Shown piece by piece: positions 43,641-64,000 of a stretch of DNA of 64,000 nt. Origin of the DNA: Takakia lepidozioides (Eukaryota; Plantae; Bryophyta); contig CM060733.1 of NCBI GenBank assembly GCA_030704615.1, positions 15,872,001 through 15,936,000 on the forward strand, in the 5' to 3' direction. Under the pieces are notes generated by a model. The model saw nothing but the letters and a program-made list of their open reading frames with translations. It did not search any database and was not told the DNA's origin. The first letter of the stretch is position 1, and each line of letters begins with the position of its first letter. Position numbers and translations under genes: made by a program.

Positions 43641-44344
43641 CTACAACCTATGTCAAACTTGACTTCAAACCAACTCTGAAATGAAGGCCATTGCATCAGA
43701 GTCAAACAGTTCTGTTCAAATTTCAACTTTTCTTTTCTCACTTCAATGTGAGTTCTATCCACAAGACCTCAACTTCAGTAAATACCTTCTCCATGACATA
43801 TCCCCTCCACTACACTTCTCCATAGCGTTCACCATCCAGTTGTTTTATGTTTCCGTATCACTCAAATTCTTGAACTTTACAACCTTCACTGGCTCACCCA
43901 ATGTCGAAAGCCATATTAAGACATTTCTATGTTTGATCCTTCATCTGCCAAGACAATCTACCTCAGCATGGATTTCCTCAATTCGTTGAGAGCTTGCAGC
44001 TTGCAAGGTGAACGATGGCAGAAAACGCAGAGCTCCTACAGTTCAAGAAGATCAAGATCCGGGCATTGTGGGCAGTTCCGAAAAAGTTGGCGCAGTGATT
44101 TCTATTGGCATATTTCGGACGGGCAGTCCGGGCAGATTCCAAAGAAATTGACGATGACGTGTCTACGATGATGTGGCACTATGGCACCCTATTCCTGCTC
44201 TACACTAAACTAGCTTCCGACCTTCGGTCGTCGCTAGAATTATAACTTTTGTTCCACTAGTTTTAATTTCTGTTTTGCTCTTTGGTACACATACTTGGAC
44301 TTTTTTCCCTTGCCCATTAGTTGCTACCTTCTTCATTTTAAGTT

Positions 44345-44947
44345 AACTTTTCCATCAAAGGCACTTTGCACATCAATTGCTCATATGTCTCCAATGCCTC
44401 CATTCCGCGCCCTTGCTGTGCATATTCTGCAATCATCGCCCTCCACGACACCACATCTCCTTCAGCCATACTGTCGAAAACTCCCGTTGCATCCTCGATG
44501 CACTCACATTTGACGTACATGTCTAGCAGGGCAGTGTTCGGAGTGACATTGGGTACAATTCCAGATGTGACGATGTCACCATGGACCACTTTGCACCTTT
44601 CCAGAGCTGCCAGGCTGGCATACGCATTGCAAATGCAAACAAACGTTATGCGGTCGGGCTTCACCCCTTCCCCCATCATTTGCTCATAGGTCTCCGAAGC
44701 CTCCATCCCACCCCTTGCTGTGCATATCCTGCAATCATCGCCCTCCACGACACCACATTTCTTTCAGCCATACTGTCGAAAACTCCCTTTGCATCCTTGA
44801 TGCACTCACATTTGACATACATGTCCAGCAGGGCTATGTTCAGGATGACATCTGGTACAAATCAGCTTTGACGATGTTACCATGGACCTCATTGCACCTT
44901 TCTAGGGCTGCCAGGCTTGCACACGCATTGCAAATGCAAACAAACGT
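44345..44947 (-). pseudogene. PLS-class PPR fragment, two tandem ~302-bp P-L-S units
   Basis: GVKPDRITFVCICNAYASLAALERCKVVH...TALLDMYVKCECIEDATGVFDSMAEGDVVSWRAMIAEYAQQGRGMEAL; unit repeated with frameshifts. Confidence 0.9.
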
Positions 44948-45117
44948 CAACAAGCTTCTCATCATCTATGTTATCTGTTTTTGGATACTTTCCTGCTGCC
45001 ACATCGGCAGTAACTTGTCAAAGTCACTCCTAACCACCACAGATACACCCAACGAGCTAACTTACAGAATTCAATATGCATCTCAGAGCCGAGTCTGATG
45101 AGAGGAAAACAGGCAGA

Positions 45118-45540
45118 TTCAGCCATATTGTTGAACATTCCCTCCACATTTGGCATACATATCCACAAGGGTATTGTTCATAATTACATTTGGTACATTT
45201 CCAGCTTTGACGATGCAACCATGGACCTCTTTGCCCTTTTCCAGGGCTGCCAGGCTTGCACACGCACACAAATGTTATGTGGTCAGGCTTCATCCCTTCC
45301 CCCCTCATTTGCTCATAGGTCTCCAAAGCCTCCATCCCGCGCCCCGGCTGTACACAGCCTGCAAGCATCGCATTTCACGACATCACATCTCATTCAGCCA
45401 TAATGTTGAACACTCCCTCCGCATCCTCAATGCTCCCACATTTGGCATACATGGTCCACGAGTATTGTTCATAATCACATCTGGTACAATTCCAGCTTCG
45501 GTGATGCAACCATGCACATCTTTGCCCTTTTCCAGGGCTG
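45118..45540 (-). pseudogene. PLS-class PPR gene fragment
   Basis: MYAKCGSIEDAEGVFNIMAE, GRGMEALETYEQMRGEGMKPDHITFVC; stops and frameshifts. Confidence 0.85.
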
Positions 45541-45757
45541 TCACCAGTAAATGGGCTCAGAAAAGTATTCATTCCACAGCTTCTCCTCATCTCTGTCACC
45601 TGTTTTTGGCTGTTTTCCTGTTGTGAGGGAAAAACTGGGTAAAATGTGTTGAAGAAGATGTCTTGATTAGCAATGCCTGATTTTATCAATTGTGCTGTTG
45701 CTTCTGCAGCTTCCAGTTGACCATCTACCCATGCAGGTTTCTTGTAGCTATCGATCC

Positions 45758-46973
45758 ACATGGAATCACACCTTCAGGTGGTGTTTGAGCGCTTGAGAGC
45801 GCACGGATTGATTAAATTACATCCGGGGAAGTGCAAGTTTCCACAAGTAGATTGAGTATCTGGGCCACATGAAATATCCTGGAGGATTGGGGGTGCAGCA
45901 GACTAAGGTAGAGGCCATCGCATAGATTCCACGCCCCACGGATGTGAGCCGAGTTTGAGCTTTCATGGGGTTGGCAAACTACTATAGACGGTTTGTCAAG
46001 GGATTTAGTGCTATTGCAAAGGCTCTAACCAAGCTGACCAAGGTAGACCAGGAGTGGCAGTGGGTAGATGAGCAAGAGCGAGCTTTTCAGGAGCTCAAGG
46101 CGAGGTTGACCTCGGCGCCCATCTTGAGACGACCTATCAGGGGGCGTCTCTTTCAGCTGCATACAGATTGGAGCATGTTGGGGCTTGGAGCGGTGCTCAC
46201 ACAGGTGGATGATGAGGAAAGAGAGTTCGTAGTGGCTTATGCTAGCCGCTCAAACAACGCTGCAAAGTCTAAGTATAGCTCATATGAGGGGAAATGCTTA
46301 GCTGCAGTGTGGGCCGTGGCACACTTCAGGTGCTATTTATACGACAATCTCTTCACCCTTGTCACGGATCACCAGCCACTCAAGTGGTTGATGGAGTCAG
46401 ACAAACTTACGGGGAAGCTTGCACGGTGGGCACTTATACTCCAAGAGTATGACTTTCAGGTTATGCATCGCCCGAGTTTGGTCAATAGGGATGTGGATGG
46501 ATTGAATCGCAATACATGCACGCCAGCAGGATGACACTGGAGCTCGGTGGCATGGTGGGACGGACAAGGAGATGGTGCCGGGATGGCATACATCTGTCTT
46601 TTTGTGTATCTTGGCATCCGGAGGTCAGGTTGGACCTACAACAGGGATGATTGTAGACGGAGTGTCTGAGGACCCTGAGGCTAGTGATGAGCCAGGTGGT
46701 GCTAGAGATATACATGAGGATTCGGTTGTGTTAGACTACCTCCACACTGGAGACACGGCAGCTAGTGTGACTGCCAAGGAGAGGGATCGGATCCTACAAT
46801 GAGCCAAGAGGTTCAAGTGGGAGAGGATACACCTTCTTTGAGTGTAGGAGGATGGTCAGGTGAGGATCGTGCCTCACCCAACACAGCGTGCACGGTTAGT
46901 GCGGCATGTCCATGAGGAGTTGGGGCATTTTGGAGTGCGACGCACTCATAGTCTACTGTAGTGGCAGTATTGA
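45758..46973 (+). mobile_element. Ty3/gypsy pol fragment (RT C-terminus, RNase H, start of integrase zinc finger), degenerate
   Basis: LHPGKCKF, FMGLANYYRRFVKGFS, LHTDWS..GLGAVLTQ, VVAYASRS, LVTDHQPLKWL, KLARWALILQEYDF, RHVHEELGHFGVRRT; cut at 46973 by the CACTA terminus. Confidence 0.93.
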
Positions 46974-46989
46974 CACTATAGGAAAAGGG

Positions 46990-47650
46990 GGGCCTTTGCG
47001 ACGCCCGCGCCACGCCGCAGCGTCGGGAAAACGCCCTTTCCGGGCACACGGGAGGCGCAAAATTTGCGACGCCCGGCCGTCGCCCTGCAGTCGCAAGGGT
47101 GTCGCCAAAATGACGTCGCAAAAATGCGACGTATGGGGGTCGCAAGCCCCCACCCCAACTCCCGCGACTGCCGGACATCGGTTTTTTCAGGCCGTCCGCG
47201 CCGATGGCAGGAGCCTCTTCGAGCGACGTCGCGCCGTCGCAGCCCTCCAGCCAACGGCATTGGTGGGGGCGTCGGCGCGGCGTCGCATCCCATTTTTTTT
47301 TCTAACCTGCCCGGGAGTCAGCCGGGTGGTACGCCAAGCGACTATTGGGCATGGCACAAAACAGCAGGAGTCGGTCTCCGCCACGCCCGGGCGTGGGTTG
47401 TTGTGACCAGCCGGCGTCGCTTTTGTTTTAAATTTAATCAAAAAAAAAAAACGTGGCGCAGGCAGGGTGGCGGTCTCCACGACGCCAGGGCGTCGCGGCT
47501 TGCGACCCCCGGACTAAAAAACATGTCGCAGGGGGTGTCGGGTGTTGCTGCCCGCAAATGGGGTTTGCGACGCCCGACCGTCGCTGCGTGCGACCCCCCC
47601 CCCCCAAAAAAAAACACGTCGCCATTGGCGACGTGCTGCAGTCGCGAGGG
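46990..47650. repeat. CACTA subterminal repeats (TTTGCGACGCCC / GCGTCGC in both orientations)
   Basis: Many GCGACG/CGTCGC-core motifs in a GC-rich tract directly inside the CACTA terminus. Confidence 0.85.
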
Positions 47651-47924
47651 CAGCCTGGGGGGAGGGGTTAGGGGTTCATTTTGGGGGTGAATTGGGGGTG
47701 GTTTTCTGTTTTTTTCCTGGTTTTGTATTTGGGGATGAGAGAACTTACAGTTCCATTTCTCTGAATTAGCAGGTACACAATTGAGTAAGCATGAATCGAG
47801 GATGAGGACGGCGCGACACATGAATAAGATGGAAGATGGAAAGATGGAAATATATTTACAAGAAATGAGCTGAAAAGCTCACAAGGGTTCAGTAGACTGA
47901 CTCTGGGACCTACATGGACTAGGA

Positions 47925-48885
47925 CTAGTCATCCTCATCCTCATCCTCAGTGGAGGACTCAGAGCTATCCGATGAGCCTGATGACTCCGCGCCCTTGGCC
48001 AAAGCACGTAAATGAGGCGGCGTTCCCCTAAGTCCCACAGAGCTCTCATCCAATCCCTGGGCATGACCCTCGACCTCATCCATACTAGTGCCCTGTAGTG
48101 CACTCATCCCCTCTGTGTTGGCCATGTTCTTCATGAGGGATTGCCAACCATGCTCCTTAGCGTAGTTGTACTCTAACGGAGATGGCTTCCTCTCAAACGC
48201 GCGTTGCTACACATGCCACAAATTAAAGTCAGTTCTTCGCGATGATGGAGCCAAAAAGAAGACATAACAAAATCCATAGGGAAGTACGACTTATAAATCG
48301 CAAGATAAAACCCTTGGATCCGCCGGTGCCCCACTGTGTGTGTGGATTCGTGCTTGTCAAGGCGGACTGTTGTTGCTTCGCGTGCCCGGTCAAATTTGGC
48401 CTTGTTTGCGGCATCAGTCTCTCCGGCAATGAGTGCATCCCACGATACATATGCAACCCCCCCCCCCAACAATTAGTGAATTACACACATACGTTGCATC
48501 GAATCCACCTCATTAATGCACATGCGACAAATGGAAGGTGACATGATTCAGGATTTGCCAACCTGTGTAATTCCATAAGGTGGTTTGGGTATGGCCCCCT
48601 TTTCCATTGCCCTCTGAATGATGTGTCTGGCACGGTACCTCCTGTCCTTCAAGTTTCACCCCACCATCTCTATCACCCTTGTGTCACTCCAATTGCCCGG
48701 AAACCGGCGGTCTAACTCACGGGCATACGCCCGCTTTGCGCCAAAGTGCTGATCAGCCCACTCGATGTGCAAAGGGAACCACCTCAATGCGAGTTCGAAG
48801 GCTGACTTCTTAATAGCCTCCCACACTAGAAGCATTCGTGTCTTTTCCGATTCGACTGCATGTCCGCGACCACTCTGGGAACCAC
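47925..48885 (-). pseudogene. 3' exons of a second CACTA-associated (TnpA-like?) gene, 5' part missing
   Basis: Open exon-like pieces (RMLLVWEAIKKSAFELALRWFPLH...; GETDAANKAKFDRAREATTVRLDKH; acidic tail ending EDEDEDD* at 47925) downstream of TnpD. Family inferred from position only. Confidence 0.4.
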
Positions 48886-51060
48886 TTGGTAGTAAACGGG
48901 CTGGTCTATTTGGATCAGGCCTTAGCCACAGATGTGACCGTATCCCTTCAATCTCCATGTCCTTTCGTACGTTTATCGTATCCGTCTCCCCAAAGATAGT
49001 CTTCAGAATGTTCTCGCAGAAGTTCTTCTCACAATGCATGGGATCCAGGAGGTACCGCTGCAAGAGGTTCTGAAATGCCAAATGTCCTCCCATGAGACCA
49101 AGTTCTATGGGCAAAAAAAGTAGAATATGTGGCAGAAGTTGTCCATGTTACTACATTCTGCTTTCAACAACTCCACGATCATCTCCACAGTGAGGTGTAC
49201 GACTTCAACATCTACTGCATAGTAGTTACACTGACTTAGGAGTTGGTGGAAGGACTCCTGACAGTAAAGGTAATTCCAGGAAGCACAATGTGAAAGAAAG
49301 TGAGTGAATGGGGGGGGGGGGATTCATGCACCTTCCAGTATGGCAAATCCCAAAGGATTGTCCGGCGCTTCACCCTGTGCTCCATGGCTGGATCCGCACT
49401 ACTTCCGTCTCCCTCCAATCTCCATGAACGCCTCTTTCTCCTTTGCAAATTGCAATGTCTCCTCCGGTGTCACAGCATTTGGTGCCATTCTCTTTTCAAC
49501 ACATCCATTGAAGTGCCTTCCTGCTCGTCGGTAGGGGTGGTTTCTTGCAAGGTGACGTCGATGCCCCATGTATATTGTCTTCCCTAGTGGCTTTGAGTGC
49601 CGTGAATCCACATAGGGCCCACAAATGGGGCACCCTTTGTAGCCCTTCGTCTTGCAACCCGCAACAAGGCCATATGCGGGGAAATCATGGATTGACCACA
49701 TGAGTATGGCACGGAGGGTGAAACTCCGTTGCCCTACTGGTTTCAAAATGTCATAAGCTTCAACTCCAATCCATAGTTCCTGTAGCTCTTCAATCAATGG
49801 TTGCAAATACACATCTATGTTTGCATTTGTCACGGACTCCTTGCCTGGAATCAAGAGAGACAACATGACAAAGAATTTCTTTGTTGTCAACCATGGTGGC
49901 AGGTTGTATGCCACCAACTGCACGGGCCATGTGGACCATGTGCAACTCTTTGATCCGTATGGGTTTACTCCATCCGTAGATACAGCCAATCGCACATTGC
50001 GTGGGTCCTCGGCAAAATCGGGCCAAGTTGCATCTATATGCTTCCATGCAAGGGAATCTGGGACATGCCTTACCAAACCATCGTTTGAGGCATTCCTGGA
50101 ATGCCAAGTCATGAGCTCACTAATGGTCTTGCATTTGTACATTCGTAATAGACGGGGGATAAGGGGAAAGTGCCTCAACACCTTGGCTGGCTGTTGTAAC
50201 CTGCCCACATCATGGTATCGGGCTGCACCGCATTTGGGGCACTCCATAGCATCCTTGTACTCTCTTCTGAAAAGTACATGTCCTTTTGGACATGCATGTA
50301 TTTTCACGTAGTTGAGGCCGAGCTTCCCAATCATTTGGTTGGCCATGTGACAGCTTTTTGGCATTTCATTTGGTTGTGGAAGCAAGTTCAGCCGAAGCAA
50401 AGAGAACAACTCGTCCACAAAATGGTCTGAGACACCGTGGGTTGTGCATAGGTTCATCAACAGCATGGTGGCAGCAAGCTTTGTGGATTTGCATCCCTCG
50501 TACAGTGGCACACATGCTTCTTCTAGTGTCATGTGTGCAGAATTCAATTCTCCATCTCCACCTCCTTCCACGCCTTCCCCCACGTGAATGCCTTCATTTC
50601 CTGCGTCATCACCATCCCCAGTTGTCGCAGCGCCGTCCCCCTCTTCAGCATCGTCCATGATGTGGAATGCATCCTGCAACATTCGAGTAATCTCCACCCC
50701 TCCGTCCATGCCTGGTTCATGTCCTGCGCCCATGACATAGTCCTCGTCTAGCCTGTCTGTATGGCTCCCTCGGGGGTGTGCATTATCCAATTGTGCCCAC
50801 TCCTCATCGTCTTCGTCTGCAGGTCCATCTCCAATCCACACCCGAAATGCTTCATGTCTTTTGTGGTGAAGGAGATGTGTGCGCACACCGTCCTCAGATC
50901 TACTTGTAGTGCCCAAACAACGTTCACATGGGCATGGCATCCTTGAAAGCCCAAGGGCTCGGGCACGTGCCACTTCTCTTTCCCACAACCTGTCATCTCG
51001 GGTGTTCTGTCTACAGGGGTGATTAATTGGAAGTCCTCCGCATGGACGAGGGGAACTCAT
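48886..51060 (-). pseudogene. CACTA TnpD/Tnp2 transposase (transposase-associated domain plus Transposase_21), frameshifted and 3'-truncated
   Basis: ORF 49399-51060: MPCPCERC, KIHACPKGHVLF, CPKCGAARY, VLRHFPLIPRL, DPRNVRLAVSTDGVNP, YNLPPW, IDVYLQPLIEELQELW, WSIHDFPAYG, GYKGCPIC. Frameshift at ~49410, then ILWDLPYWK, intron 49070-49331, LDPMHCEKN. Similarity ends at ~48886. Confidence 0.93.
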
Positions 51061-52760
51061 TTTTGTTGGGGAGCCTCTTCAATGCTGTTTGTGCATGCCG
51101 TTGCAGGGGGCCGGATTCTCCTTTGCAGAGATTCCTCAATTTGGCTCTGCCACTCCCATTTCACTACCGTCAATTCCCTCCTCCTGCAATCTCAATTTGA
51201 AAGGTTCAGCCGCACGTCCTTTGGCAGAGAAGACAGTTGACATTTTATACCAACCGGTAGATTCCACAACATGATGAAAAGTTACACTCAACAGCAAACC
51301 ATTTAAAAGCCATCACGATGTTTCCCATCATAACTAGAATCTTTTCAACAAGACACTGAGAGAAATGACCAAAATCGACTCAAACAACGACATCCTGGAA
51401 AACGACCTGTCTCTACAGTTCGTGTGTGTGTAAGGAATCAGAGGACGTACGTGGAATTCCAATTTTCACGATTGACGACGTTGTGATCTTGGGCATATGG
51501 TTGAATGTGTATGAAATGTGTGCATTGAAGTGTGAACAACCTGACTACAAGGCCAAAACCTGCGCCACTTGTCTTAGGCCATCTCCAAATCACGTTTCGG
51601 CGGACAATCCCGTTCCGTTGCCGTGAAATTGCACCGTGGCGGGAAGGGAGTCCATTTGTGTGGCTCTATCACCATGGCGGGAAGGGGAGCATGTTAAAAA
51701 TGGAGCATTGCCCTGCCTTTTCACTCATTTGATGTTTGTAGCTTCTTCCACCATCTTTCTTACTTAATTCTGATTCTTGCAATGCTGCCCTTGAGACGGC
51801 AACTGCAAGTGACCGGATCCTTTGATCGTCGCATTCAAAGACACTTACGTGTAGCAGATCGTAGACCCCCAAATGCCTGGAGAGAAAGCCAGAGGGCAGT
51901 CAATGCATGCACGGTTGTTTTGCACTGGTTGGGACGGAGTGGGGTGCAGAGGATGCGTGCTGTGCCCGAGTTCGCATGCCTAGCATCCTGCAGCCGGCGG
52001 CTTTTGCACGTTGGGCAGCAGTACCCTCTGTTGTATGATTACCATTTGTGGTATAGACTCACCGGCCTCCCCTGTCCACTTGGGTCTTGGGACAGCGACT
52101 TATGGAGTATGTAGACAGAGTTGCATGTCGCGCAGGTACACCAAAATCTCCCATGTAACATAAACCCATTTCTCATTCATGCTTGCATGTGATCCACGGG
52201 GTAATTTCCATGTTCTCCCAGCTGATGTGGGTTCACAAATTCTCGGTGTGTAGGTGTGTGTGTGAGGACCTGGTGCGATGGGTGTCGAATGGACCCTTCT
52301 CTGCGATGGGAGAACCACTACAGTTGAGTTTGTTTTTGCTGAATCATTTGGTAGAGCACTGTGTTCACTTCTCACACATCATGCGCATTTTCTCCAAGAA
52401 TGCATGTAAAGCAGAGCCATACACGGCATCATTGCAGTGTGTTTCCTTCGCTTAATTTTGAACGAAAAAAGTTAACGGATCCATGTCAGTTGTGTGAATC
52501 ACTACATCTAGTTGTCTGGAGGATTGTAAGTGGTTTAGGGTTTAACGTCTCAAAGTCGAAAAGGCCATAGTGTCGGATGCACGACACGTGTTCATATTTG
52601 AAATCAACAATGGCCGGATCTTCACTACAGATCGGGGGGGTGTGTGATCACACTCCCCTCCTTGTCCTTCTTTCCTCCTTTGCGTGTCTTGGTCTTCCTC
52701 GCTCGTCTTTGTCTTGGTCATGGTCTATGTCCTCACTCGTCTTCATCTTTGTCATGGTCT

Positions 52761-53060
52761 ATGTCCACGCCTAGTAAGAAGCGCTCGACCGCCGAGGCAG
52801 CATCACCTCCTCCCACTTCTGCACATTCCAGCCCCGCGGTGCGAAGGAGCCCCCGCCTGGCTCGACTGAATCCGGTACAGATGGCGTCGGTGCGAGAGGG
52901 AAGGCAGAGCGGTGGGCGGTCTTCGAGTTCGGATTTTGACACAAGCGAGTATAGCATGGGCGACGACGATGAGGTGGAGGACAGTTCGGAGGAAATTGCA
53001 CCTCCATCTGCAGAGTCTCTCCAAAAGGTGCGCAAACGGCACAAAACTGCTGCGCATGAG
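52761..53060 (+). CDS. First exon of an unknown gene (basic/Ser-rich and acidic, RRSPRL motif); downstream exons not found
   Basis: ATG at 52761, 100 open codons (MSTPSKKRST...VRRSPRLARL...DDDEVEDSSEE...KVRKRHK), then donor GTGAGT at 53061; a LINE fragment follows. Confidence 0.45.
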
Positions 53061-53109
53061 GTGAGTTCTACCCCTACTTGTGTTCTTGTTTTCTGGGCGT
53101 TGAGTTCTC

Positions 53110-53790
53110 CTGAAACTGAAACTGGGATGCACATATCCATAAAGTTGTTCAAACGGATGTCGTAGTATACAGGGCAGTAGAAGAAGAAGTGTTCCTCAGT
53201 TTCAATTTCCTTGTTGCGCCCTATGCAAGCTGGACATAGGCGGTCCTCCCGTTGCAGGTTTTCCCATCTGCCAGTCTCTATCCGTAGGTTGTGGGAACCC
53301 ACCCTGAACCGCCCCAATGCCCTCAAGAGGGAAGGAGGTAAGGGTGCTGAAAGGTAATTTGATCTGAAGATTCTATCATCGCGGAGCACCAAGAATGTCT
53401 CTCGATAGAAGTGGAGCTTTGTTGTGAGATTGGGTAGCATCCAAGTTCTCTTGACATGTAATTCCATAAGCTCTCTCCGAATGAGTCTGTTGCGGTCATG
53501 TCTGGATGTGATGTCCACCTCATGTGGGTTTATTGGTAATTGGAAAGCAGTAGAAAGTCCGTTACGTTTCAATAAATTGTCCACTCCAGCATACCAGGAG
53601 TTCCCGAAACCTGCAGCTTTGGGGGCTGCTATTTCATGAGCCATGAGCCATGAGCGGCATGAGCCATGAGCAGAGTCGTAAGCGTGGAAAAAAACATGAG
53701 CAGCACTATTTTCCGGAAATGAGTGTCCGCGGGCATAGGGTTTAGGGTGCCACGGTCATAGGGGGAGAAGGACCTCCCGATGAAGGAGGT
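53110..53790 (-). mobile_element. RTE-like LINE-derived element, internally deleted, with (CAGTTT)n tail
   Basis: NSWYAGV...RALGRFRVGSHNLRIETGRW...DRLCPAC...IETEEHFFFYCPVYYDIR, followed directly by a 3'-end-like sequence and CAGTTTCAGTTTCAG; (GCTCATG)n at 53634-53670. Confidence 0.8.
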
Positions 53791-54083: not shown

Positions 54084-54794
54084 TCACGTTGTCAATGGGA
54101 CTTCGACTACTCTCAGAACTAGCTCATGGGTCATGGGGCTCCTCCATGTAAAGTCGATTGCAGCCGTTGTACCGCCCCTAGTGATGTTCACCACAATGTC
54201 CTGCCCTTCAATCATACCACCATCGAAAATGGAAATCTTCACGTTTTCGTCGTCCACACCAATGCGAATGTCCCCATACAATGGAGAAGAGGAGCGCACT
54301 CCTTGAGGAGAATAGGTCTCTCCGATGGAGTCCACCCACGTCCAGTGGCAGCAATTCCACCGCAACAGCATAGCAGTGCGCCTTCTTCTGCATGGTTGAC
54401 CGTCGTAGCTGGGAAAATCGGAATCGAGGATGCGCAGGAGCCACGGACTCCTCAGACCAAGATCGTCACCCCGCTCGAAGGCGTAGTGGCCTACGATATA
54501 CTCAAAAGCCACCAATGTTTCCACAATCGAACCAGTATCTTCTGTGTAATCTGTGTACCAGATAACAATGTCTCCCGATGTGGCCGAATACATTGCATAA
54601 TCGATGCCTCCAAATGGGCAGTCGTCCCGGTTCCGGAAGCACGGCATCCATGCAAAGGAGGACCTGAGGACAACTTGGATGCAGATGACAATGACCTTGC
54701 GGACAGCTACGAAGCCCTTAGATTTTGGAAATGATGCGAAGCGGAAGAGCAGTCCGGCCTCCAATAATGGAGCATCTGGGTCCCACGTACCCAC
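54084..54794 (-). CDS. Unknown protein, paralogue A of a head-to-head pair (start uncertain)
   Basis: 236-aa ORF sharing DYAM, SGDI, FERG, SPW, RWNCC, YGDIR, DGG, DIVV, ELVLR and EVP with 55171-55746. Confidence 0.75.
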   Translation of the reverse strand: MGTWDPDAPLLEAGLLFRFASFPKSKGFVAVRKVIVICIQVVLRSSFAWMPCFRNRDDCPFGGIDYAMYSATSGDIVIWYTDYTEDTGSIVETLVAFEYIVGHYAFERGDDLGLRSPWLLRILDSDFPSYDGQPCRRRRTAMLLRWNCCHWTWVDSIGETYSPQGVRSSSPLYGDIRIGVDDENVKISIFDGGMIEGQDIVVNITRGGTTAAIDFTWRSPMTHELVLRVVEVPLTT

Positions 54795-54857
54795 CGACGG
54801 AGGTGGATGAACCCATACATCTTTCTCATCAAGAAGTTATAGTTTGAGATCTGCCAC

Positions 54858-54921
54858 CGAAGTCCATCCCCCCGGATGGAAATTCGGCGCCGCATTTACA
54901 TCGAAGAGGGGATGGACTTCG
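54858..54921. promoter_or_regulatory. ~64-bp imperfect palindrome centred on a copy of the 22-bp motif, between the divergent paralogues
   Basis: CGAAGTCCATCCCC ... GGGGATGGACTTCG outer stem around GGAAATTCGGCGCCGCATTTAC (54878-54899). A regulatory role is inference. Confidence 0.55.
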
Positions 54922-55055
54922 TCGTGTCCAGTGGCTATCGGCCCACCTGGCAGTGAGTGCCCATAGTTTGCATGGCAGGGTAGGAAACTGAAACGGCTAC
55001 ATTCATGAAGCAGCCAATCTTCATCGGTCCAGGATTCTGTAGGGGGGAAATTTAA

Positions 55056-55746
55056 ATGTGCCCTGGAGTGTTTGTGACGAATTGCAGCGTTAGCTTGAAC
55101 TTTTTCCAGCCACCGCGCTGCTCCTCCTCCATCCGGGAGCTGCTGTCATTGAGCGTACACCGCTACTCTTTTGTGCCGCCGAAATCCAGCCGACTACCCT
55201 TATCATGGCCACGATTATGCTATGTTCAAACCAGAATCAGGAGACATCATTGTCTGGCTCTCTGTTTTCACAGACGCTGCTGGAATCAAGCAAGAGTCTT
55301 TGCGCGCAATGGAGTATCTGGAGGGCTATTACCGCTTTGAGCGAGGTGAGGGCGAGGGTCAATGCAGTCCGTGGGTCCTGAAAATTGTTGACCTCGATAT
55401 ACCAAGCTGGAAAGGGATGTCGGACAGATCACGCACGGCCTCGCTTTGGCGCTGGAACTGCTGCCAGTGGACCAGGGAGGACGGCACCGGGGAAAACTAT
55501 ATACGTGCAGATCACTCCGCTCTTCCAGTGTATGGAGACATTCGGCTGAGTTGCGAAGACGAATCGCACGGGCACATGAGGCCCACAGTGACCTTGTCAA
55601 TGTATGATGGTGGTATCATTGATGGACATGACATTGTCGTCGGCTCCAGCAAGGGCAGCAGAACGACCGAATTGCAGTTTACCTCGAGGTGCCGCAGCAG
55701 TGATGAGCTTGTTTTGAGGGGTATCGAAGTTCCGTCGACTTGGTGA
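55056..55746 (+). CDS. Unknown protein, paralogue B (ORF 55171-55746; N-terminus probably from ATG 55056 across a frameshift at ~55168)
   Basis: Colinear with paralogue A over ~175 aa, roughly 45% identical by eye; both stop three residues after EVP. Confidence 0.7.
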
Positions 55747-56001: not shown

Positions 56002-56767
56002 TTGAATGCGGCACCGCATTTCTATGTCGGCATCGAAATGCGGCACCGCATTTCCATGTGGGACAATGAAATGCGGCACCGCATTTCCATGTGGGACAAG
56101 GAAATGCGGTGCATCATTTCCGTCCAGGTACACGAAATACCAACACGGGTCTATAAATTGGACAGACAACGAGGTTGGCATTGCAAATGCGGCGACGCAT
56201 TTCCAGCTTGGCAATGGAAACTTCTTTTTGGACAGGGAATGCGGTGCCGCATTTCCGTCCAACACTTCGAAAAGTGTGACATTTCCGACCAGCGCGATGG
56301 AATGCGTTACCGCATTTCCGTGAGAGGGTCTGCAAATGGACAAATTGCGATGTCCGTTCTGGAAATGCGGCGCCGCATTTCCATGTCCGTCATCGACTTT
56401 TTTTTACAATGGAATGCGGTGCCAATTTTTGCTGATGGGCCTGCAGTTCGAACAACGACCATCCCCAATATGGAAATGCGGCACCGCATTTTCAATTCCA
56501 CCATCTCGACCTCCTTGTTCGACCTCCTTGTTCGACCTCTGTAAGCGTGGTGGCATCCATGCAATGAGCGGGAGAGGCCAAAACTGGCGTGTGGACAAAG
56601 GAAATTTTGGAAATGCGGCACCGCATTTCAATCGGCCGATTACTTTTTACTATGCCAACATTGAAATGGAAAATTTAGTCCCTCCCCTGTTTTGGAAATG
56701 CGGTGCCGCATTTCCAAAAGAGGTTCTTAGAGTTGCCAAAATTTTGGAAATGCGGTGCCCCATTTCT
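56002..56767. repeat. Array of ~13 palindromes GGAAATGCGGYRCCGCATTTCC downstream of the ParB-MTase-like gene
   Basis: Starts at 56002, 56034, 56067, 56100, 56183, 56235, 56298, 56361, 56410, 56472, 56609, 56694, 56746. Confidence 0.92.
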
Positions 56768-56903: not shown

Positions 56904-59900
56904 TTAATCTTGAAAATCATCCGAATCCTCATCCTGTTCTAGACTGTCCTGCTCCGCCTCCACCCCCTCAGTGCCTTTCTCATCTCCAGCGGACTGCTCG
57001 TTGGCCAGGCTTTCGAAAATCCCATCTTCCCCTTGCGGAACTGTCCATCTCACCTCCGTTGGGTCGTCTTCCTCCCTGTCTGCGTCGCTCTCATCCGCTG
57101 AATCACATATGTACTTTCGTACCCGTCTACCTGTCTGAGCTGCTGCCAACTCTTTCCTTATCCTTCTGTCCTCCCTAGCCCTCTCCAAAATCTGCTCTAC
57201 TTTACTGGGATTCTCACTTCTTCTAATCGCTGTATTTGCGAGTTTAGCTGCATAACTAGGAAGGGAGTAGTCCCTCACCGGGCTCGTCATGAAGTCGGCC
57301 CTCGCAAAGAACGGGACATTCTTCCTGGCAGGAAGTGTAGGCCCTACATGTTTCGACCCGGACCCTGCAATCCTGCACATGACAATCATCAACGAGACGA
57401 GAACCACAGTCGGGAAATTCGTTTGACATAAATGACCCAGAAGGCTTTGCAAACTTACAATGTTTGCACTCACTCGTATTCCGGGTTCTCCTCCGCATCA
57501 ATGTCCACTGTGTCTTCCTCGGACTCCGACGAATCCGAGGAGACTTCCGCTCTGTCGGGAGCCTTAACATTCCGTTGCAGCCCTTCCAGATGGGATCCCC
57601 ACACGGATGAATCCTCCTCGTAGGCAAAGAGGTGCCGGTCGGAAAACCGCCCAGCCCACATTGAGGCACCTGTTACAATGCCATCCACACATTACCACAT
57701 GGCGCTTCAGATGTTGCGAACTACATCCTAACGAGAATTTGCAGAACAGCATAGATCAAGATTCTGCATACCTGTCCCACAGATGAGGTCGAGCACTGTG
57801 CCCTCCACGTCTGTGCATGTCTCCATAATTGTCTGAATGAAGGCAGGGCTCCGAGTCCGTGAGTACCGCAGGGGTTCCGTTGAAGTGAGGCTATGAGGGA
57901 GAAGTTCCTTGGGAACGTTGTTGAACAGAACGTCGTAATCGAGTGGGTCGCAGTTCGGGTCAACCTTTCCTCCCTCCTTCCGGAAAGCAAAGGTGGAGTT
58001 CTCCTTCACAAAGCAGTATGCATCGAACTGCTTCGTCTGCATACACAGGGGGAAAACGATTAGAAACCGAATGCGGCACCGCATTTGAAAACACCCAAGC
58101 AAATGAATGGACGAGTGCCAGTGTCGTAATCACCTTCTTCCCTTCCGACCGAAGGCCCAGTGTGTTGATGCACGTCCACTTCTTTTTCAGAATCGGGACG
58201 GCGCTCTTGCGGGTCCACTTCGCAATTCCTGTCTGAGTGTTTTTTCCTCTGCTCGCCAGGACAACCACACAGCCTCTGTCGTCCAACACCATGCGGGCAA
58301 GCCCGAATCCTTTCTTCCAAAAGTCCTCCGAGTACCTGTTCCAAGATGGCAAAGCTTGCAGTCCTTCCACAGGCTCTCCGTCCGGAATATCCAAGATGAT
58401 CATATCGCAAGACCACTCGGTGGCATTTCCGCCCCTCCTACAATCCTTGTCTGCACACACCCTCTCAAAGAACGAGACCATATTCTGAAATCCTGGGGTG
58501 TCGGAAGGCTCTTCGGCAGTCGCCTTCTTCAGTGCTCTGCCCTTCAGACCCTCCATGGTCTTCATGTATGCCAACTTGGCTGCCCGTCCATCCAAAGCCG
58601 CCAAGAAACTCTCATTTACACACTGGACTACTGTTTCGGGAGCCACTTTCGGCCTCTTCATTTCCACCGGCTCGAAAGGGTGCCCCCCTGGGGGGTTGAA
58701 GAGTGCCTTCTTTGCCGAGCCAGTTCTCGTGCCTCTCGTGACAACGGTGGGCACAGGGGAGGCAGCCTGCGTTTGGGGGGTGGGCTGGTTGCAAAGTCTC
58801 CATCGGAGTCCTCTTCCTCACCCTCTTCCTGAACAGGCTGTTTCTGCTTCTTCGTTTTGGCGGGTGTCACAACAGCTGCTCCTTGCTGGCGAGTCCTCTT
58901 CTTCGACCCCTTCTGTTGGGCCTGCACAGCTGCATCCACCGTCTTTTGTGCCATCTCAGCTGCCTTTCTGGATTCTTCCAGAGCAGCAGATTCCTTTGCC
59001 GACTTTGGCCCAGCAGGGACACGTCTTTCCTTTCTCTTCTCTTCTGCCAAGGCGTGCAGATCTTTCTCAGACTCGTCAACAATACCGCCAGACATGTCCA
59101 GGTACCACGGGCATCCAACGAGATGCGCGGGATGCCATTGTTTCTGCATCTCGGGTGTGTAGACACAGCTTGGGCCCGCCACGGTCCAAGCCATGAAGAA
59201 CGGGGGCTCTTGAGCCAGGGCCCCTGTCTGAAGGAGCACGTATTTCATATACCTGCAAGGCAGTCAGCATGCGTGAGCAAAAGTTGAGACCAACCTACTC
59301 GCAGAGTGCCACCGAAAACATAAAATGCGAATGCGGTGCCGCATTTCCGAGACAAACCTCGTAACCAGGCTTCGCATACAAGGGCAGCTGTGCTTCACCT
59401 GTAAACAATTCGCATTGCAGCTTTCCCCGCTCCCTCCTGATGTGTAAACTCCACGCTCCTTCTTGCTGTCTGTAGCTCTCTGGCGAAAAGGTTGTCCTTG
59501 TACGCACATCTGAAACGTGTCACGTAGTCTTCCAATGTCTGTGTTCCATCCCATTTGACGTACAAGCCGAACGAATTTGTGTGCATTACGACTTGCTCCT
59601 TCGCATTCGACATTACCTGCGATTCCCAAATGCATTGTCACGTAGCAGTTCAGGGAATTCATGTCAGAAAAGCAAATCTGGGGAAGTACCTTGAATTACC
59701 TGGAACCACCAAGTCATACGGTTGAGCCACACATCCACTGCAGGGTCGGAAACTTCCAGTGGAAAAGACCACATTGTCCTTATGCTCTCGGATGCATTCC
59801 AGATCGACAGCCACCGTGTCTGCCATTTCCGATCCAATGTCAGGAGCTGGAAGAGAGTGGCTATTGCTAGGAAGGAACTTCAGTGCATTGAAACCTCACC

Positions 59901-61813
59901 TTCTCTTTCGCCTCCACACATGCCGTTGAGAGGTGATGCAGTTTCTCCAATTGCATGGTCGGCTGCATGGCCCGAGAATAGTGTTTTGCAATCTCGGGGA
60001 TGAAGTCCTTTCCAAGTGCCGGATCTGCAATTGCCACCAGCTTCACAAGCTTTGACTTGTATTTGGTTCTGGACTTGACACCGGCTTCCTTCAAGTGCTC
60101 AGTCAATGACTGCAACGTTTTGACCTGCCCCTCACTTTCCATGAAGAAGCGTTTGGCATGGGCCAAATCCAGCTTGATGTTTGACTGCCAACAAAAACAT
60201 GCAGAAGCGTTACATTCGATTCATGTGGAAACATTACTGAAAATTGGGGAAGGATGAGCAGAGGGAAATTGGAGGACGACTTACTTCGTATATCACCTCC
60301 ACCATTCCATCCATAGTGAGACGATACCATGTCCGGTCTGTTTTTGCAACGGCTTTCTGAATGAGCTCGGGCTCCAGCATTTCCGCAAACATCTGCGGAT
60401 CAGTGAGACCAGTTTTCCTCACCCTGTACAGCATATGTGCCATGTGGGTATGCACGTACGCATTCTCAGTGACCCTGCAAGGCACACTCTCCAGTTCAGT
60501 ACACGGAAGCACGGAAACAAACCAGAATGGAAACCGAAATGCGGCACCGCATTTCGAACGTGCTAGGGAGGGTATGAGTATCTTACGAGTTGAGGTCCGC
60601 CATGGCATTCTTGAGCAGGGAGGAGTCTGCCGCCTTCACCTTGAGGATGACACACTCCACCATGTAATGCCAGCCAATGTGCTTGGCATGGTTCTGCTTG
60701 ATGTACTCCCACCAGGCGAGAAGTCGGTGATTCCCGTCCCACACAAAGAACATTTTACCCGACATATGGCCGAAGTCTGGATCACCCTTCAGCGTCGCCT
60801 CGAATTCGTCGTTGCGAGTGTGCCAGTGGGTATCCCACGTTGACAATTCATCGGCAGTGGGTCCACGAGTTTCGCCGTCCTCATTCTCAATGGAAACGTA
60901 AAACGCTGCCGATCCCAGACGGTACCCTTCTCGAAATGCGAACTTGAGCTTATCCACATCTCCGGGAAGGGCCTGCCTGACGATGGGAAGGGAGACCATG
61001 CGACAGAGTGGGATTCGAAGAGTCCGCTGGAATACCCTGCTGCCCAGAACTCTGCCAATGCTACTGTGTGTCTCCTCCAACATTTTATCCGCTGCACTTT
61101 TGAAATCCTCCGGAGACATGTCTGTAGGTGCCGGTAGTGGCTGAGCAGCTGGAGCATCCTCAACTGGAGCTGCACTCTGGGGCCTGTGTGCGGGCAATTC
61201 TGCCATTGCAGAGGCCTCCTCCGGGCCTGCTTGCTCATCGGTGGTGAGGTCTTGCTGCGAACGTTGAGCGGCAGCACCCTCCTCCGGTACCAAATCGAGA
61301 TCAACGGTCGATCCCATTGCCTTCGCTGCAGCAGAGTCGGCCCCAACATCTGCAGGCGGGAAATCCTCCAGGAACTGAGCTTCAGCTCGTGGAAGCGGTT
61401 TTGCGGGAGATTGTTCGGCCGTCGCCCTGATTGCCTTCTGCTTCCTCATCCTTGCAGGTGAAGGTGTCTGCTGCAATTGAATCTGTCTTTACCCTGCTGC
61501 TTCATTCGCGTTGGGGGGGGTGAATCGGCCTGAGCCGGTTCAGAAGCCAGTAGAGGGACGGGCTGCTTCTTCTTCGACTTTGCTGGAGAAGGGCCCGACC
61601 CCTGCTGGCGATTCTCCATGACCGAAGAACGCGAGTCGATCTCTGGGGCTTTGAACTTGCCCTTCGAAGCCGCGTCTTTGAATCGCACAGGGCTAGGCCC
61701 GGCAGGAATACCCGCGCTCGGGGATCGGGTGGGTGTACGTGCTGCAGCTAGCTCCTCGGACTCTTCCTGCGGCTCTTCGGATTCCTGCGATCCCTCCAGC
61801 ACGTCCACCTTTC
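56904..61813 (-). CDS. Spliced gene with a ParB/Srx-like domain and a beta-class N6A/N4C DNA-methyltransferase-like domain (two frameshifts; 5' end unresolved)
   Basis: Exons 60587-61813 (frameshift ~61488), 60285-60474, 59900-60184, 59700-59819, 59399-59616, 58134-59252 (frameshift ~58770), 57772-58036, 57474-57669, 56904-57372; GT-AG with consistent phases. ParB-like: IPLCRM..VRQALPGDVDKLKFAFREGY...FFVWDGNHRLLAW. MTase-like: CDMIILDIPDG...LARMVLDDRGCVVVL...TRSPAFIQTIMETCTDVEGTVLDLICGTG|ASMWAGRFSDRHLFAYEED. Confidence 0.72.
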
Positions 61814-62458: not shown

Positions 62459-64000
62459 GCGAATGCGGCGCCGCATTTCCGTTAAGTACCATCACGAAGC
62501 TACACATCCGTACTTGTTGGAAGAAAATGCGGCACCGCATTTCCGTTCCACCTTCACATACCTTAGTTGTTGAACGGAAATACGGTGCCGCATTTCCGTC
62601 CCACAGCTCCATGTATGAGATTCAAAAGGGAAATGCGGCGCCGCATTTCCGTTCTGGAATGTCGAAAGGTGCGATTCGGACGGGAATGAGGCACAACATT
62701 TCAGTTCCCGTGGTTCATGATTTTCAATGTGAACGGAAATGCGGTACCGCATTTCCGTTCCCCCTTCACATACGTTAGTTGATGAATGGAAATGCCGTGC
62801 CACATTTCCGTTCGGGAAAGTATAGAGGTCTCACCTGGACAGAAATGCGGTGCCGCATTTCCGGTCTCGAAAGTTTGAAGGTCTCACATGGATGGAAATG
62901 CGGCAACACATTTCCGTAGCACAGCTCCAGGCCCCATATAGAAAACGGAAATGCGGCGCCGCATTTCCGTTCTAGAATGTCGGAAGGTGCGACTCGGACG
63001 GAAATGCGGTGCCGCATTTCTGTTCCCGTTGCGCACGATTTTCAGTCAGAACGGAAATGCGGTACCGCATTTCCGTTCTGTAGAGTATTAACGTCTGACG
63101 CTGGCGGAAATGCTGTGCCGCATTTTCGTTCCACAGCTCCATGCCTCACATACAAAACGGAAATGCGGCGCCGCATTTCCGTTTTGGAATGTCGGAAGGT
63201 GCGACTCCGACGGAAATGCGGTACCGCATTTCAGTTCCGATGTTTCAGGATATTTCATCAGAACGGAAATGCGGTGCCGCATTTCCCTTTTGAATCTAAT
63301 ACATTCCGTTCTGGAATGTTGGGAGGTGCGACTCGGATGGAAATGCGTTGCCGCATTTCAGTTCCGATGGTTCACGATTTTCAGTCAGAACGGAAATGCG
63401 GTACCGCATTTCCGTTCTGGAATGTTGGTAGGTGCGACTCGGATGGAAATACGCTGCCGCATTTCAGTTCAGATGGTTCACGATTTTCAGTCAGAACGGA
63501 AATGCGGTACCGCATTTCCGTTCTGGATAGTATGAATGTCTCAAGCGGTCGGAATTGCGCTGTATGAAGCTGTCGGAATCGCACTCGGCTCCATGCATCA
63601 GATACAAAATGGAAATGCGGCGCCGCATTTCCGTTCTGGAATGTCGGAAAGTGCGACTCGGACAGAAATGCGGTGCCGCATTTCTGTTCCCGTTGTTCAT
63701 AATTCTCAATCAGAACGGAAATGCGGTACCGCATTTCCGTTCCACCTTCACATACCGTGCTTGGTGGATGGAAATGCGGTACCGCATTTCCGTTATGGAG
63801 AGTATGAATGTCTTTTAAGGACGGAAATGTGCTGCAGCATTTCTATCCCTCAGCTCCATGCATCAGATACAAAATGGAAATGCGGCGCCGCATTTTCGTT
63901 CTGGAATGTCGGAAAAGTGCGACTCGGACGGAAATGCGGTGCCGCATTTCTGTTCCCGTTGTTCATAATTCTCAATCAGAACGGAAATGCGGTACCGCAT
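62459..64000. repeat. 53-bp-period array of ~29 palindromes GGAAATGCGGYRCCGCATTTCC upstream of the ParB-MTase-like gene; runs off the window
   Basis: Starts at 62459, then 62523+53n to 63265, then 63339, 63392, 63445, 63498, 63551 (degenerate), 63611, 63664, 63717, 63770, 63823, 63876, 63930, 63983. The 31-bp spacers fall into several recurring classes. Confidence 0.95.

What the first reader, a model, noticed from the sequence alone, without database searches (positions are those of the whole stretch)
62459..64000. 22-bp palindromes at a strict 53-bp period (five helical turns) with variable spacers
Seen: GGAAATGCGGYRCCGCATTTCC recurs every 53 bp for 15 consecutive units (62523-63265) and again after interruptions. 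The 31-bp spacers diverge into several classes but keep their length. Two irregular intervals, 64 and 74 bp, are about 6 and 7 turns; one (60 bp) does not fit. Established: B-DNA has about 10.5 bp per turn, and phased palindromes are typical of cooperative dimer-binding arrays such as parS-type centromere sites and iterons. Inference: length and palindrome are constrained while spacer sequence is freer, as expected for a protein-loading platform immediately upstream of a ParB-like gene.
Basis: partly seen in the sequence, partly recalled or inferred. Interest (0 to 1): 0.85.

Follow-up and report, generated by a model that had tools for sequence, protein, structure and literature searches.

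The report
Phased palindrome array in plant transposon
A jumping gene in a moss-like plant has, in front of its bacterial-type ParB-like gene, a row of about 30 conserved palindromes set exactly 53 bases (five DNA turns) apart with otherwise unrelated DNA between them. This looks like a docking platform for one of the element's own proteins, a design reported so far only in algae and never tested.

Summary
The palindrome has 39 matches where 0 are expected. It recurs every 53 bp from 62523 to the window end, with steps of 64, 74, 113 (53+60) and 54. The true palindrome is 30-34 bp.

The 23-bp spacers fall into five classes arranged as a 265-bp higher-order unit. Between classes they are no more alike than random DNA (29%), yet all have the same length. 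The palindrome arms are 82-86% identical. They keep their CpGs, while the central CpG has decayed to TG, CA or TA.

The neighbouring gene (minus strand, about 61.0-57.2 kb) has a ParB/sulfiredoxin fold and a DNA-methylase-like end, and its family is transcribed and spliced. At least eight related families in a liverwort and in moss-associated samples carry their own palindrome beside the same gene. Their spacings favour multiples of 10.5 bp (p about 0.002 without this window), though one array type does not.

In relatives the array lies between this gene and a divergent zinc-finger transposase, so which protein binds is open. Canonical ParB/parS membership is not met.

The scan has noted this design many times on other DNA of this genome. 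Red and brown algal papers from 2025 describe a similar design.

The parts
62459..64000 (.). Array of 30-34-bp palindromes at a 53-bp period, cut by the window end. It holds 27 units, including two degenerate ones.
62523..63286 (.). Run of 15 consecutive units at exactly 53 bp. Spacer classes A, B, C1, C2 and D form a 265-bp higher-order unit.
63287..63304 (.). Inverted copy of a B-type spacer end. This rearrangement junction makes the 74-bp step.
   Evidence: I12: 62611-62656 against 63259-63304, 96% complementary
63551..63610 (.). Broken unit of 60 bp with a decayed palindrome. It gives the 113-bp step.
56002..56767 (.). Second, irregular cluster of the same palindrome, 3' of the ParB-like gene. 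Steps are 32, 33, 33, 83, 52, 63, 63, 111, 137, 85 and 52.
60535..60556 (.). Single palindrome in the intron after the ParB/Srx exon.
59327..59348 (.). Single palindrome in an intron.
58070..58089 (.). Single palindrome core in an intron.
   Evidence: (family D6)
54878..54899 (.). Outlying single copy of the palindrome with 2 mismatches.
60586..61042 (-). Conserved exon encoding the ParB/sulfiredoxin-fold domain, with the motif VWDGNHRLLAW.
57225..60106 (-). Further conserved exons of the same gene. Exon 58143-58481 matches the N6/N4-methylase-like part of the liverwort protein P0153.
59449..59964 (-). Stretch covered by a spliced contig of a run guessed to be RNA. Two GT-AG introns of 83 and 80 nt are removed.
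   Evidence: tables 5 and 8, record 20

Best explanation
The array is the cis-acting control region of a large cut-and-paste DNA transposon that carries a ParB/sulfiredoxin plus methylase-like accessory gene. It is a row of about 30 sites for a dimeric, element-encoded DNA-binding protein. Neighbouring sites lie five helical turns apart, on the same face of the DNA, so that bound dimers can contact each other and build one cooperative nucleoprotein complex.

The most likely binder is the ParB/Srx-methylase-like protein encoded directly downstream. The complex would let the element recognise itself. It could set the activity of the two divergent genes on either side, and possibly mark the element or shield it from host silencing.

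Shown here:
- sequence and length constraint on the array;
- a helical-phase bias across independent families;
- recurrence of the gene-plus-array layout;
- the ParB/Srx fold of the neighbouring gene;
- transcription and splicing of the gene family.

Inferred: that any protein binds, which protein it is, and what follows from binding. My confidence that this is a protein-binding platform of some element-encoded factor is about 0.75. My confidence that the ParB-like protein is the binder is about 0.45.
For: 1. Constraint. Arms are 82-86% identical across spacer classes whose 23-bp spacers are at random-level identity (29%) but of identical length. Information content is 1.66 bits per position in the palindrome against 0.63 in the spacer.

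2. CpG decay. The centre dinucleotide is only CG, TG, CA or TA (9, 16, 9 and 8 of 42 copies), the signature of CpG decay. The two arm CpGs survive in 38/42 and 36/42 copies.

3. The neighbouring gene. The exon model has pLDDT 92, and all top Foldseek matches are sulfiredoxin, Noc, PadC, ParB or KorB. The full-length liverwort relative P0153 adds a C-terminal N6_N4_Mtase match, and that part aligns to the window.

4. Recurrence. Riccia L001-L003, L005, L006, L088, L090, L091 and the moss-associated S and T families each have their own 20-28-bp palindrome within about 1 kb of the gene, or inside it. This window's palindrome occurs in none of the 91 loci.

5. Phasing. Mean cosine at 10.5 bp is 0.27 for 52 de-duplicated distances from other families (p = 0.002), and the spectrum from 6 to 16 bp peaks at 10.5-10.6. 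A family-level t-test gives p = 0.012. Seven of nine strict array periods lie within 0.15 turn of a whole number (p = 0.004).

6. Published precedent. Tandem inverted-repeat arrays beside a ParB-like accessory gene of red-algal Plavaka transposons were proposed to be bound by that protein (bioRxiv 10.1101/2025.02.11.637652). Those transposases belong to another superfamily, so the ParB-like gene is the common factor.

7. Expression. A spliced GT-AG contig is present in an RNA-like run.
Against: - No binding data exist.
- No sequence-specific DNA-binding domain was identified in the ParB-like protein. The model of the region after the Srx-like domain failed (pLDDT 43).
- The Srx-like domain has DGNHR, not the arginine-rich ParB CTP motif.
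- The methylase motif IV is degenerate: DIPDG here (reading of the ORF) and DLPTG in Riccia.
- In five relatives a transposase with a Cys/His zinc-finger motif lies on the other side of the array, so co-occurrence does not separate the two candidates.
- Most of the 80 metagenome loci with a homologous exon showed no array within the DNA held. Many of these are short or decayed.
- Phasing is moderate (mean cosine about 0.3) and absent in the Riccia P2 arrays.
- My de-duplication choices affect the p-values.
Confidence: 0.45

Rival explanations
1. The palindromes are binding sites of the element's transposase. Its N-terminal Cys/His zinc finger may be of the WRKY/GCM type. The sites would work like the subterminal TNPA motifs of En/Spm or the MURA sites of Mutator, serving end recognition, synapsis or autoregulation of the transposase promoter. 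The ParB-like gene would merely sit next to them.
For: In L001, L006, L088, L090 and L091 a homologous gene of about 1190 aa lies divergently on the other side of the array. It has a C-terminal SWIM finger and a conserved motif YDGHxW..T.TSNI..C.GHL.C.N..C. A scan note (s1-460696) places a GCM-like transposase domain 1.3 kb beyond this window's end. The same palindrome also occurs 3' of the gene (56002-56767), which could be a subterminal zone.
Against: The zinc-finger region gave no GCM, WRKY or FAR1 match in Pfam or in the PDB, either as single sequences or as a 25-sequence profile. The only hint was one faint FLYWCH row. In Riccia the subterminal palindrome (P2) differs from the intergenic one (P1). 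Arrays beside ParB-like genes are also reported in EnSpm-type algal elements with unrelated transposases. The transposase of this copy could not be read because it lies outside the window.
Confidence: 0.25
2. It is an ordinary higher-order satellite inside a dead transposon. The palindrome is kept alike by gene conversion or hairpin-mediated slippage rather than by protein binding, and the 53-bp period is merely inherited.
For: The array has a higher-order structure (106, 212 and 266 bp) and rearrangement junctions. In L090 the spacers are nearly as alike as the palindrome (83% against 88%). The palindromes fold strongly as single strands (-17 kcal/mol).
Against: Spacer classes are at random-level identity yet of identical length. 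Arm CpGs are kept while the centre CpG decays. Unrelated palindromes recur beside the same gene in many lineages, with a shared bias towards 10.5 bp. A neutral satellite predicts none of these.
Confidence: 0.1
3. It is a true partition centromere of the bacterial type. ParB would load at the sites as a CTP-gated clamp, and a ParA-like ATPase would segregate excised or episomal copies.
For: The neighbouring gene has the ParB N-domain fold. The palindromic sites cluster next to that gene, as parS does.
Against: The domain has DGNHR in place of the GERRxR arginine patch. No helix-turn-helix was shown. No ParA-like hit appeared among the 15 ORFs scanned. The element is a chromosomal transposon.
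Confidence: 0.03
4. The array acts through nucleic-acid structure, either as cruciforms or as a source of hairpin or small RNAs that feed back on silencing.
For: Perfect 15-bp stems are predicted.
Against: Stems of 10-15 bp are short for Dicer substrates. No RNA-like contig covered 61550-62450, next to the array. This model does not explain the fixed spacing.
Confidence: 0.05

Closest known systems
Plavaka (EnSpm-type) transposons of red algae with accessory gene PAG3 and adjacent tandem inverted-repeat arrays (Petroll et al. 2025, bioRxiv 10.1101/2025.02.11.637652)
   Same: A DNA transposon carries a ParB-like accessory gene with tandem arrays of inverted repeats next to it. Self-binding was proposed and has not been tested.
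   Different: There the ParB-like domain is fused to a 2OG oxygenase and the host is a red alga. Here it is fused to an N6/N4-methylase-like domain with a degenerate catalytic motif, and the host is a non-seed land plant. The relatives' partner transposase is a SWIM-finger type. I found no mention there of helical phasing or of spacer-length constraint.
Sola1-1_Ec32 of Ectocarpus, with a ParB-like plus N4/N6 DNA methyltransferase accessory gene (PMC12477816)
   Same: The same two-domain accessory protein, encoded on the strand opposite the transposase in a giant DNA transposon.
   Different: A brown alga and a Sola1 transposase. The passages I read describe no palindrome array.
Bacterial ParB-parS, Noc-NBS and KorB-OB systems
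   Same: A ParB N-domain fold and palindromic sites clustered near the gene. These systems offer a model of cooperative or spreading binding.
   Different: The arginine-rich CTP motif is replaced by DGNHR. A helix-turn-helix and a dimerisation domain were not shown, and there is no ParA. Sites number about 30 at a fixed 53 bp, against a few scattered parS sites.
Subterminal transposase-binding repeats of plant DNA transposons (En/Spm TNPA 12-bp motifs, Mutator MURA sites; from my own knowledge)
   Same: Many short element-specific motifs, partly in inverted pairs, bound by an element-encoded protein.
   Different: Those lie at the element ends with irregular spacing. This array is internal, between two genes, and strictly periodic.
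Plasmid iterons
   Same: Helically phased repeats that load a plasmid-encoded protein.
   Different: Iterons are direct repeats of about 17-22 bp bound by a Rep initiator at an origin. Here the sites are palindromes and there is no Rep.

Membership tests
Bacterial ParABS partition system (parS centromere) | ParB N-terminal (ParB/Srx) fold | tested here: met
   AF2 model with pLDDT 92. The top 30+ Foldseek matches are Srx, Noc, PadC, ParB or KorB, with E about 1e-2 and probability about 0.99. There was no sequence-level hit.
Bacterial ParABS partition system (parS centromere) | Arginine-rich CTP-binding motif (GERRxR type) | tested here: not met
   The conserved motif is VWDGNHRLxAW in 47 relatives. 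My comparison with the ParB motif rests on my own knowledge of it.
Bacterial ParABS partition system (parS centromere) | Helix-turn-helix DNA-binding domain after the N-domain | tested here: inconclusive
   The model of P0153 residues 170-530 had pLDDT 43 and could not be used. The atlas gave nothing.
Bacterial ParABS partition system (parS centromere) | ParA ATPase partner encoded nearby | tested here: not met
   No such Pfam hit among the 15 ORFs of 44-64 kb that I scanned. The scan was not exhaustive.
Transposon-borne ParB-like accessory module with inverted-repeat arrays (algal Plavaka PAG3 / Sola1 ParB-methylase type) | ParB-like domain protein encoded inside a DNA transposon | tested here: met
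   ParB/Srx exon at 60586-61042. In relatives the gene lies beside a SWIM-finger transposase, with candidate terminal inverted repeats in Riccia.
Transposon-borne ParB-like accessory module with inverted-repeat arrays (algal Plavaka PAG3 / Sola1 ParB-methylase type) | Fusion to a DNA- or chromatin-modifying domain | tested here: met
   Riccia P0153 matches PF01555 N6_N4_Mtase at 5e-5, just under Pfam's cut-off. The window aligns to that part at 58143-58481. Motif IV is degenerate, so catalytic activity is doubtful.
Transposon-borne ParB-like accessory module with inverted-repeat arrays (algal Plavaka PAG3 / Sola1 ParB-methylase type) | [quoted passage not shown] | tested here: met
   Seen in this window and in at least 8 related families.
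Transposon-borne ParB-like accessory module with inverted-repeat arrays (algal Plavaka PAG3 / Sola1 ParB-methylase type) | The protein binds its own array | not testable with these tools
   Needs EMSA, DAP-seq or ChIP.
Ordinary tandem satellite | Monomers homogeneous along their whole length | tested here: not met
   Spacers are 29% identical between classes, against 82-86% for the palindrome.
Plasmid-type iterons | Direct repeats bound by a Rep initiator at an origin | tested here: not met
   The sites are palindromes, and no Rep-like ORF was seen.
GCM/WRKY-type zinc-finger target sites | A neighbouring protein carries a recognisable GCM/WRKY/FAR1 domain | tested here: inconclusive
   The relatives' transposase has a conserved Cys/His motif but no Pfam or PDB match. 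This copy's transposase lies outside the window.

The most novel reading that the evidence does not exclude
A eukaryotic transposon uses a ParB/Srx-type protein in the way bacteria use ParB. The protein would nucleate on a helically phased row of palindromes, then bridge or spread over the element. This would build a self-recognising nucleoprotein domain that controls the element's own transcription and protects it from, or hides it within, host silencing chromatin. The site spacing would be selected so that dimers stack on one face of the DNA.
Probability: 0.2. Interest if true: 0.85.

Novelty: new variant of a known kind. Interest (0 to 1): 0.55.

Why it matters
Accessory genes of giant eukaryotic transposons are almost unstudied. 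If the array is the loading site of the element's own ParB-like protein, it gives a compact, testable example of a transposon that recognises its own DNA with a bacterial-type module.

The design is unusually clean: about 30 sites, exactly five turns apart, with free spacers. That makes direct experiments on cooperativity and spacing simple. It would also extend a design so far noted only in algae to land plants, and it adds a quantitative property, helical phasing, that any mechanism must explain.

Tried and rejected
- **Sequence searches of the ParB-like exon.** Pfam and PDB searches, as a single sequence and as a 47-sequence profile, found nothing meaningful. Only the fold search identified the domain.
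- **Reading beyond the window end.** Exact-protein look-ups for two window ORFs found nothing. No protein closer than 50% identity exists in the collection. Other copies of this family and this copy's transposase therefore stayed out of reach.
- **Adiantum locus.** Its DNA could not be fetched.
- **First palindrome finder.** With loops of at most 3 it missed the moss families whose centre is 6-8 nt. This was corrected.
- **Fold of the region after the Srx-like domain.** It failed with pLDDT 43. The atlas search was blank, and a homologue search for the mid-exon found only two proteins.
- **GCM-likeness of the relatives' transposase finger.** Not confirmed by Pfam or PDB.
- **The palindrome elsewhere.** It is absent from viral contigs and from all 91 fetched loci.
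- **The head-to-head paralogue pair at 54084-55746.** I rejected it as a general binder because it is not conserved in any related locus.
- **The CACTA transposase at 49399-51060.** It has no palindrome within 3.8 kb and is probably a separate neighbour.
- **The 64- and 74-bp steps as selected extra turns.** I rejected this reading. The 74-bp step is a rearrangement junction and the 64-bp step is the array edge.
- **Joined protein.** Exons were searched apart by reference.

Full report
**What is there**

The window is from a eukaryote, a non-seed land plant by its content. It holds pentatricopeptide-repeat fragments, a Gypsy RNase H and a CACTA transposase, coding density is low, and there are no tRNA or Rfam hits. 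Earlier notes of the scan and the coded run labels agree with a bryophyte-type host.

The reported palindrome is real. There are 39 matches at up to 3 mismatches, against none in 100 shuffles, and all lie between 54878 and the window end. From 62523 the starts follow 62523 + n*53 for 15 units. The unit at 62682 is decayed. The later steps are 74, 53 x3, 113, 53 x5 and 54, and the step from 62459 to 62523 is 64. TRF reports the same array with periods of 53, 106, 212 and 266. The window end cuts it. A scan note on an overlapping window implies that it ends about 160 bp further on (not checked).

**Anatomy**

The conserved unit is longer than reported. GAAC precedes the 22-mer and GTTC follows it, often with CA and TG outside. 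That gives a 30-34-bp palindrome and leaves a 19-23-bp spacer.

Spacers fall into five classes (A, B, C1, C2, D) that cycle as a five-unit, 265/266-bp higher-order repeat whose copies are 89% alike.

| Comparison | 23-bp spacer identity | Palindrome identity |
|---|---|---|
| Between classes | 29% (random level) | 82-86% |
| Within a class | 74% | 86-88% |

The five old spacer lineages have lost all resemblance but kept their length to the base. Recent indels and rearrangements do occur: four of about 29 steps deviate. The 74-bp step is one of these. It contains an inverted B-type spacer end (63287-63304; pair I12). The 113-bp step holds a broken unit. Because 53 is not a multiple of 3, the open frames that run through the array are accidental.

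**An internal test of constraint**

The centre of the palindrome is only ever CG, TG, CA or TA (9, 16, 9 and 8 of 42 copies). This is what a methylated CpG becomes by deamination on one or both strands. The two CpGs in the arms are kept in 38 and 36 of 42 copies, with only 1 and 2 deamination-type changes. A neutral, methylated satellite should lose all three alike. The arms are therefore held by selection or protected, while the centre is free.

**The neighbouring gene**

Six-frame comparison with related loci shows at least nine conserved exons on the minus strand, from 61042 down to 57225. Single palindromes lie in three of its introns and a second cluster lies 3' of it, at 56002-56767.

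The first conserved exon (60586-61042) has no Pfam or PDB sequence match. It does have 500 relatives in the representative library, including annotated proteins of the liverwort Riccia sorocarpa and of Adiantum ferns. With that alignment the model is confident (pLDDT 92). Every leading Foldseek match is a ParB/sulfiredoxin-fold protein: Srx, Noc, PadC, ParB or KorB. The E-values are weak (about 1e-2), but the matches are unanimous and probabilities are near 1.

The full-length liverwort protein P0153 (1207 aa) ends in an N6_N4_Mtase match just under Pfam's cut-off. The window aligns to that part at 58143-58481. The catalytic motif IV is degenerate: DIPDG here and DLPTG in Riccia.

A contig of a run guessed to be RNA removes two GT-AG introns on the minus strand (59611/59695 and 59819/59900). 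These coincide with the conserved exons, so the gene family is transcribed and spliced. I searched exons apart and did not join them into one protein.

**Relatives**

I fetched 91 loci in all: liverwort chromosomes, ENA and Logan contigs, and 80 moss-associated metagenome contigs. None contains this window's palindrome. At least eight families, however, have their own palindrome of 20-28 bp beside or inside the homologous gene.

| Family or locus | Palindrome | Arrangement |
|---|---|---|
| Riccia L001-L003, P1 | TTCCGGCGAG-N-CTCGCCGGAA | upstream of the gene |
| Riccia L001-L003, P2 | a related palindrome | near both element ends |
| L005 | AATGGTCGG-RT-CCGACCATT | 85-bp array |
| L006 | GACCCTCTCGG-CR-CCGAGAGGGTC | upstream of the gene |
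| L090 | GGAGTTTC-N6-GAAACTCC | twelve units at exactly 96 bp, ending 62 bp before the ORF |
| L091 | GTGTCTCGG-AT-CCGAGACAC | ten units at 117 bp |
| S family (moss-associated) | CAACTTT-N8-AAAGTTG | strict 51-bp arrays |
| T family, L088 | their own palindromes | few sites |

Several of these share an inner CGG-NN-CCG core with variable outer arms. Palindromes are more conserved than spacers in each array I measured: 86% against 44% here, 77% against 51% in S, 96% against 74% in L091 and 88% against 83% in L090. Many metagenome loci showed no array in the DNA held. Many of those loci are short or decayed.

**Helical phasing**

I collapsed repeated values within each array and dropped near-duplicates between homologous copies. 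This left 52 centre-to-centre distances under 260 bp from families other than this window.

- Mean cosine at 10.5 bp is 0.27 (p = 0.002 against a plus-or-minus 5 bp jitter null).
- The best period between 6 and 16 bp is 10.5-10.6.
- With the window included, p < 1e-4.
- A family-level t-test gives p = 0.012.
- Of nine strict array periods (53, 51, 85, 127, 67.7, 83, 96, 117, 139), seven lie within 0.15 turn of a whole number (p = 0.004).

The bias is moderate and not universal. The 66-69-bp subterminal P2 arrays of Riccia are unphased. My de-duplication choices are a caveat.

**Who binds**

In L001, L006, L088, L090 and L091 a homologous gene of about 1190 aa lies on the opposite strand, upstream of the ParB-like gene. 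It has a C-terminal SWIM finger and a conserved Cys/His motif. In four of these five loci the array lies between the two genes; in L091 it lies after the first ParB exon. This gene has no match in the window, which fits a scan note that places a transposase zinc-finger domain 1.3 kb beyond the window end. The array is therefore the divergent intergenic region of a transposase and a ParB-like gene, and co-occurrence cannot tell the two candidates apart.

For the ParB-like protein:
- arrays beside ParB-like accessory genes are reported in red-algal elements with an unrelated transposase;
- in Riccia the intergenic palindrome differs from the subterminal one.

For the transposase:
- it has a plausible sequence-specific finger, whereas I could not identify any DNA-binding domain in the ParB-like protein.

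The finger's proposed GCM likeness was not confirmed by Pfam or PDB profile searches.

The paralogue pair at 54-55.7 kb is not conserved in relatives. The CACTA transposase at 49-51 kb has no palindrome near it. Both are unlikely partners.

**What is known**

Two 2025 papers describe the nearest things.
- Red-algal Plavaka elements have a ParB-like plus 2OG-oxygenase gene and adjacent tandem inverted-repeat arrays, which the authors propose that protein binds.
- A brown-algal Sola1 element has a ParB-like plus N4/N6-methylase gene.

A search for the same thing in bryophytes found nothing relevant. The scan itself has noted this design many times on other DNA of this genome. New here are three results: the demonstration that spacer length is held while spacer sequence is free, the differential CpG decay, and the cross-family bias towards 10.5 bp.

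**Verdict**

The feature is real and constrained. It is best read as a cooperative protein-binding platform of a transposon. The binder is unresolved. It is a new variant of a recently described kind, not a bacterial-type centromere.

The one read-laying run used 5451 letters.

Noticed in passing
window 49399-51060 (-) and 48656-49114 (-): A CACTA/EnSpm transposase (Transposase_21, E = 1.5e-74, plus a weak Transpos_assoc match). No copy of the palindrome lies within 3.8 kb. It is probably a separate neighbouring element rather than the array's partner.
   Followed up: partly
window 54084-54794 (-) and 55171-55746 (+): A head-to-head pair of paralogous ORFs with no Pfam match. They are not conserved in any of the 91 related loci.
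   Followed up: partly
L001 2138-16022 (Riccia sorocarpa chromosome CM100801.1): A liverwort element of about 13.9 kb with candidate terminal inverted repeats. It uses two related but distinct palindromes. One sits subterminally at both ends and is unphased (66-69 bp). The other sits in the intergenic region between the transposase and the ParB-like gene and is phased.
   Followed up: partly
L091 3945-7514 (-), L088 1730-4982 (-), L006 2446-5077 (-), L090 3740-7619 (-), L001 4146-8113 (-): A conserved transposase-like protein family of about 1190 aa with no Pfam assignment apart from a C-terminal SWIM finger. It has dozens of relatives in public data and a distinctive Cys/His motif (YDGHxW..T.TSNI..C.GHL.C).
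   Followed up: partly
window 46900-47700: A G+C-rich stretch (55%) with a dispersed 21-nt motif (TTTGCGACGCCCG...) in five copies and poly-C tracts, lying between the Gypsy fragment and the CACTA gene.
   Followed up: no
window 44338-45761: Tandemly duplicated pentatricopeptide-repeat coding fragments (repeat families D9-D12), probably a decayed PPR gene.
   Followed up: no
window 52733-53644 (-): A 303-aa ORF ending in a Cys/His motif of the kind found at the end of non-LTR reverse transcriptases. It had no Pfam hit at E <= 0.01.
   Followed up: no
window 42448-42795: A 143-bp tandem repeat of 2.4 copies, unrelated to the palindrome array.
   Followed up: no
window 59329-60555 (run X7): Assembly contigs of one DNA run jump between the two intronic palindromes, skipping 1186 bp. 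This is most likely repeat-induced collapse at the palindrome, or a deleted copy elsewhere in the genome.
   Followed up: no
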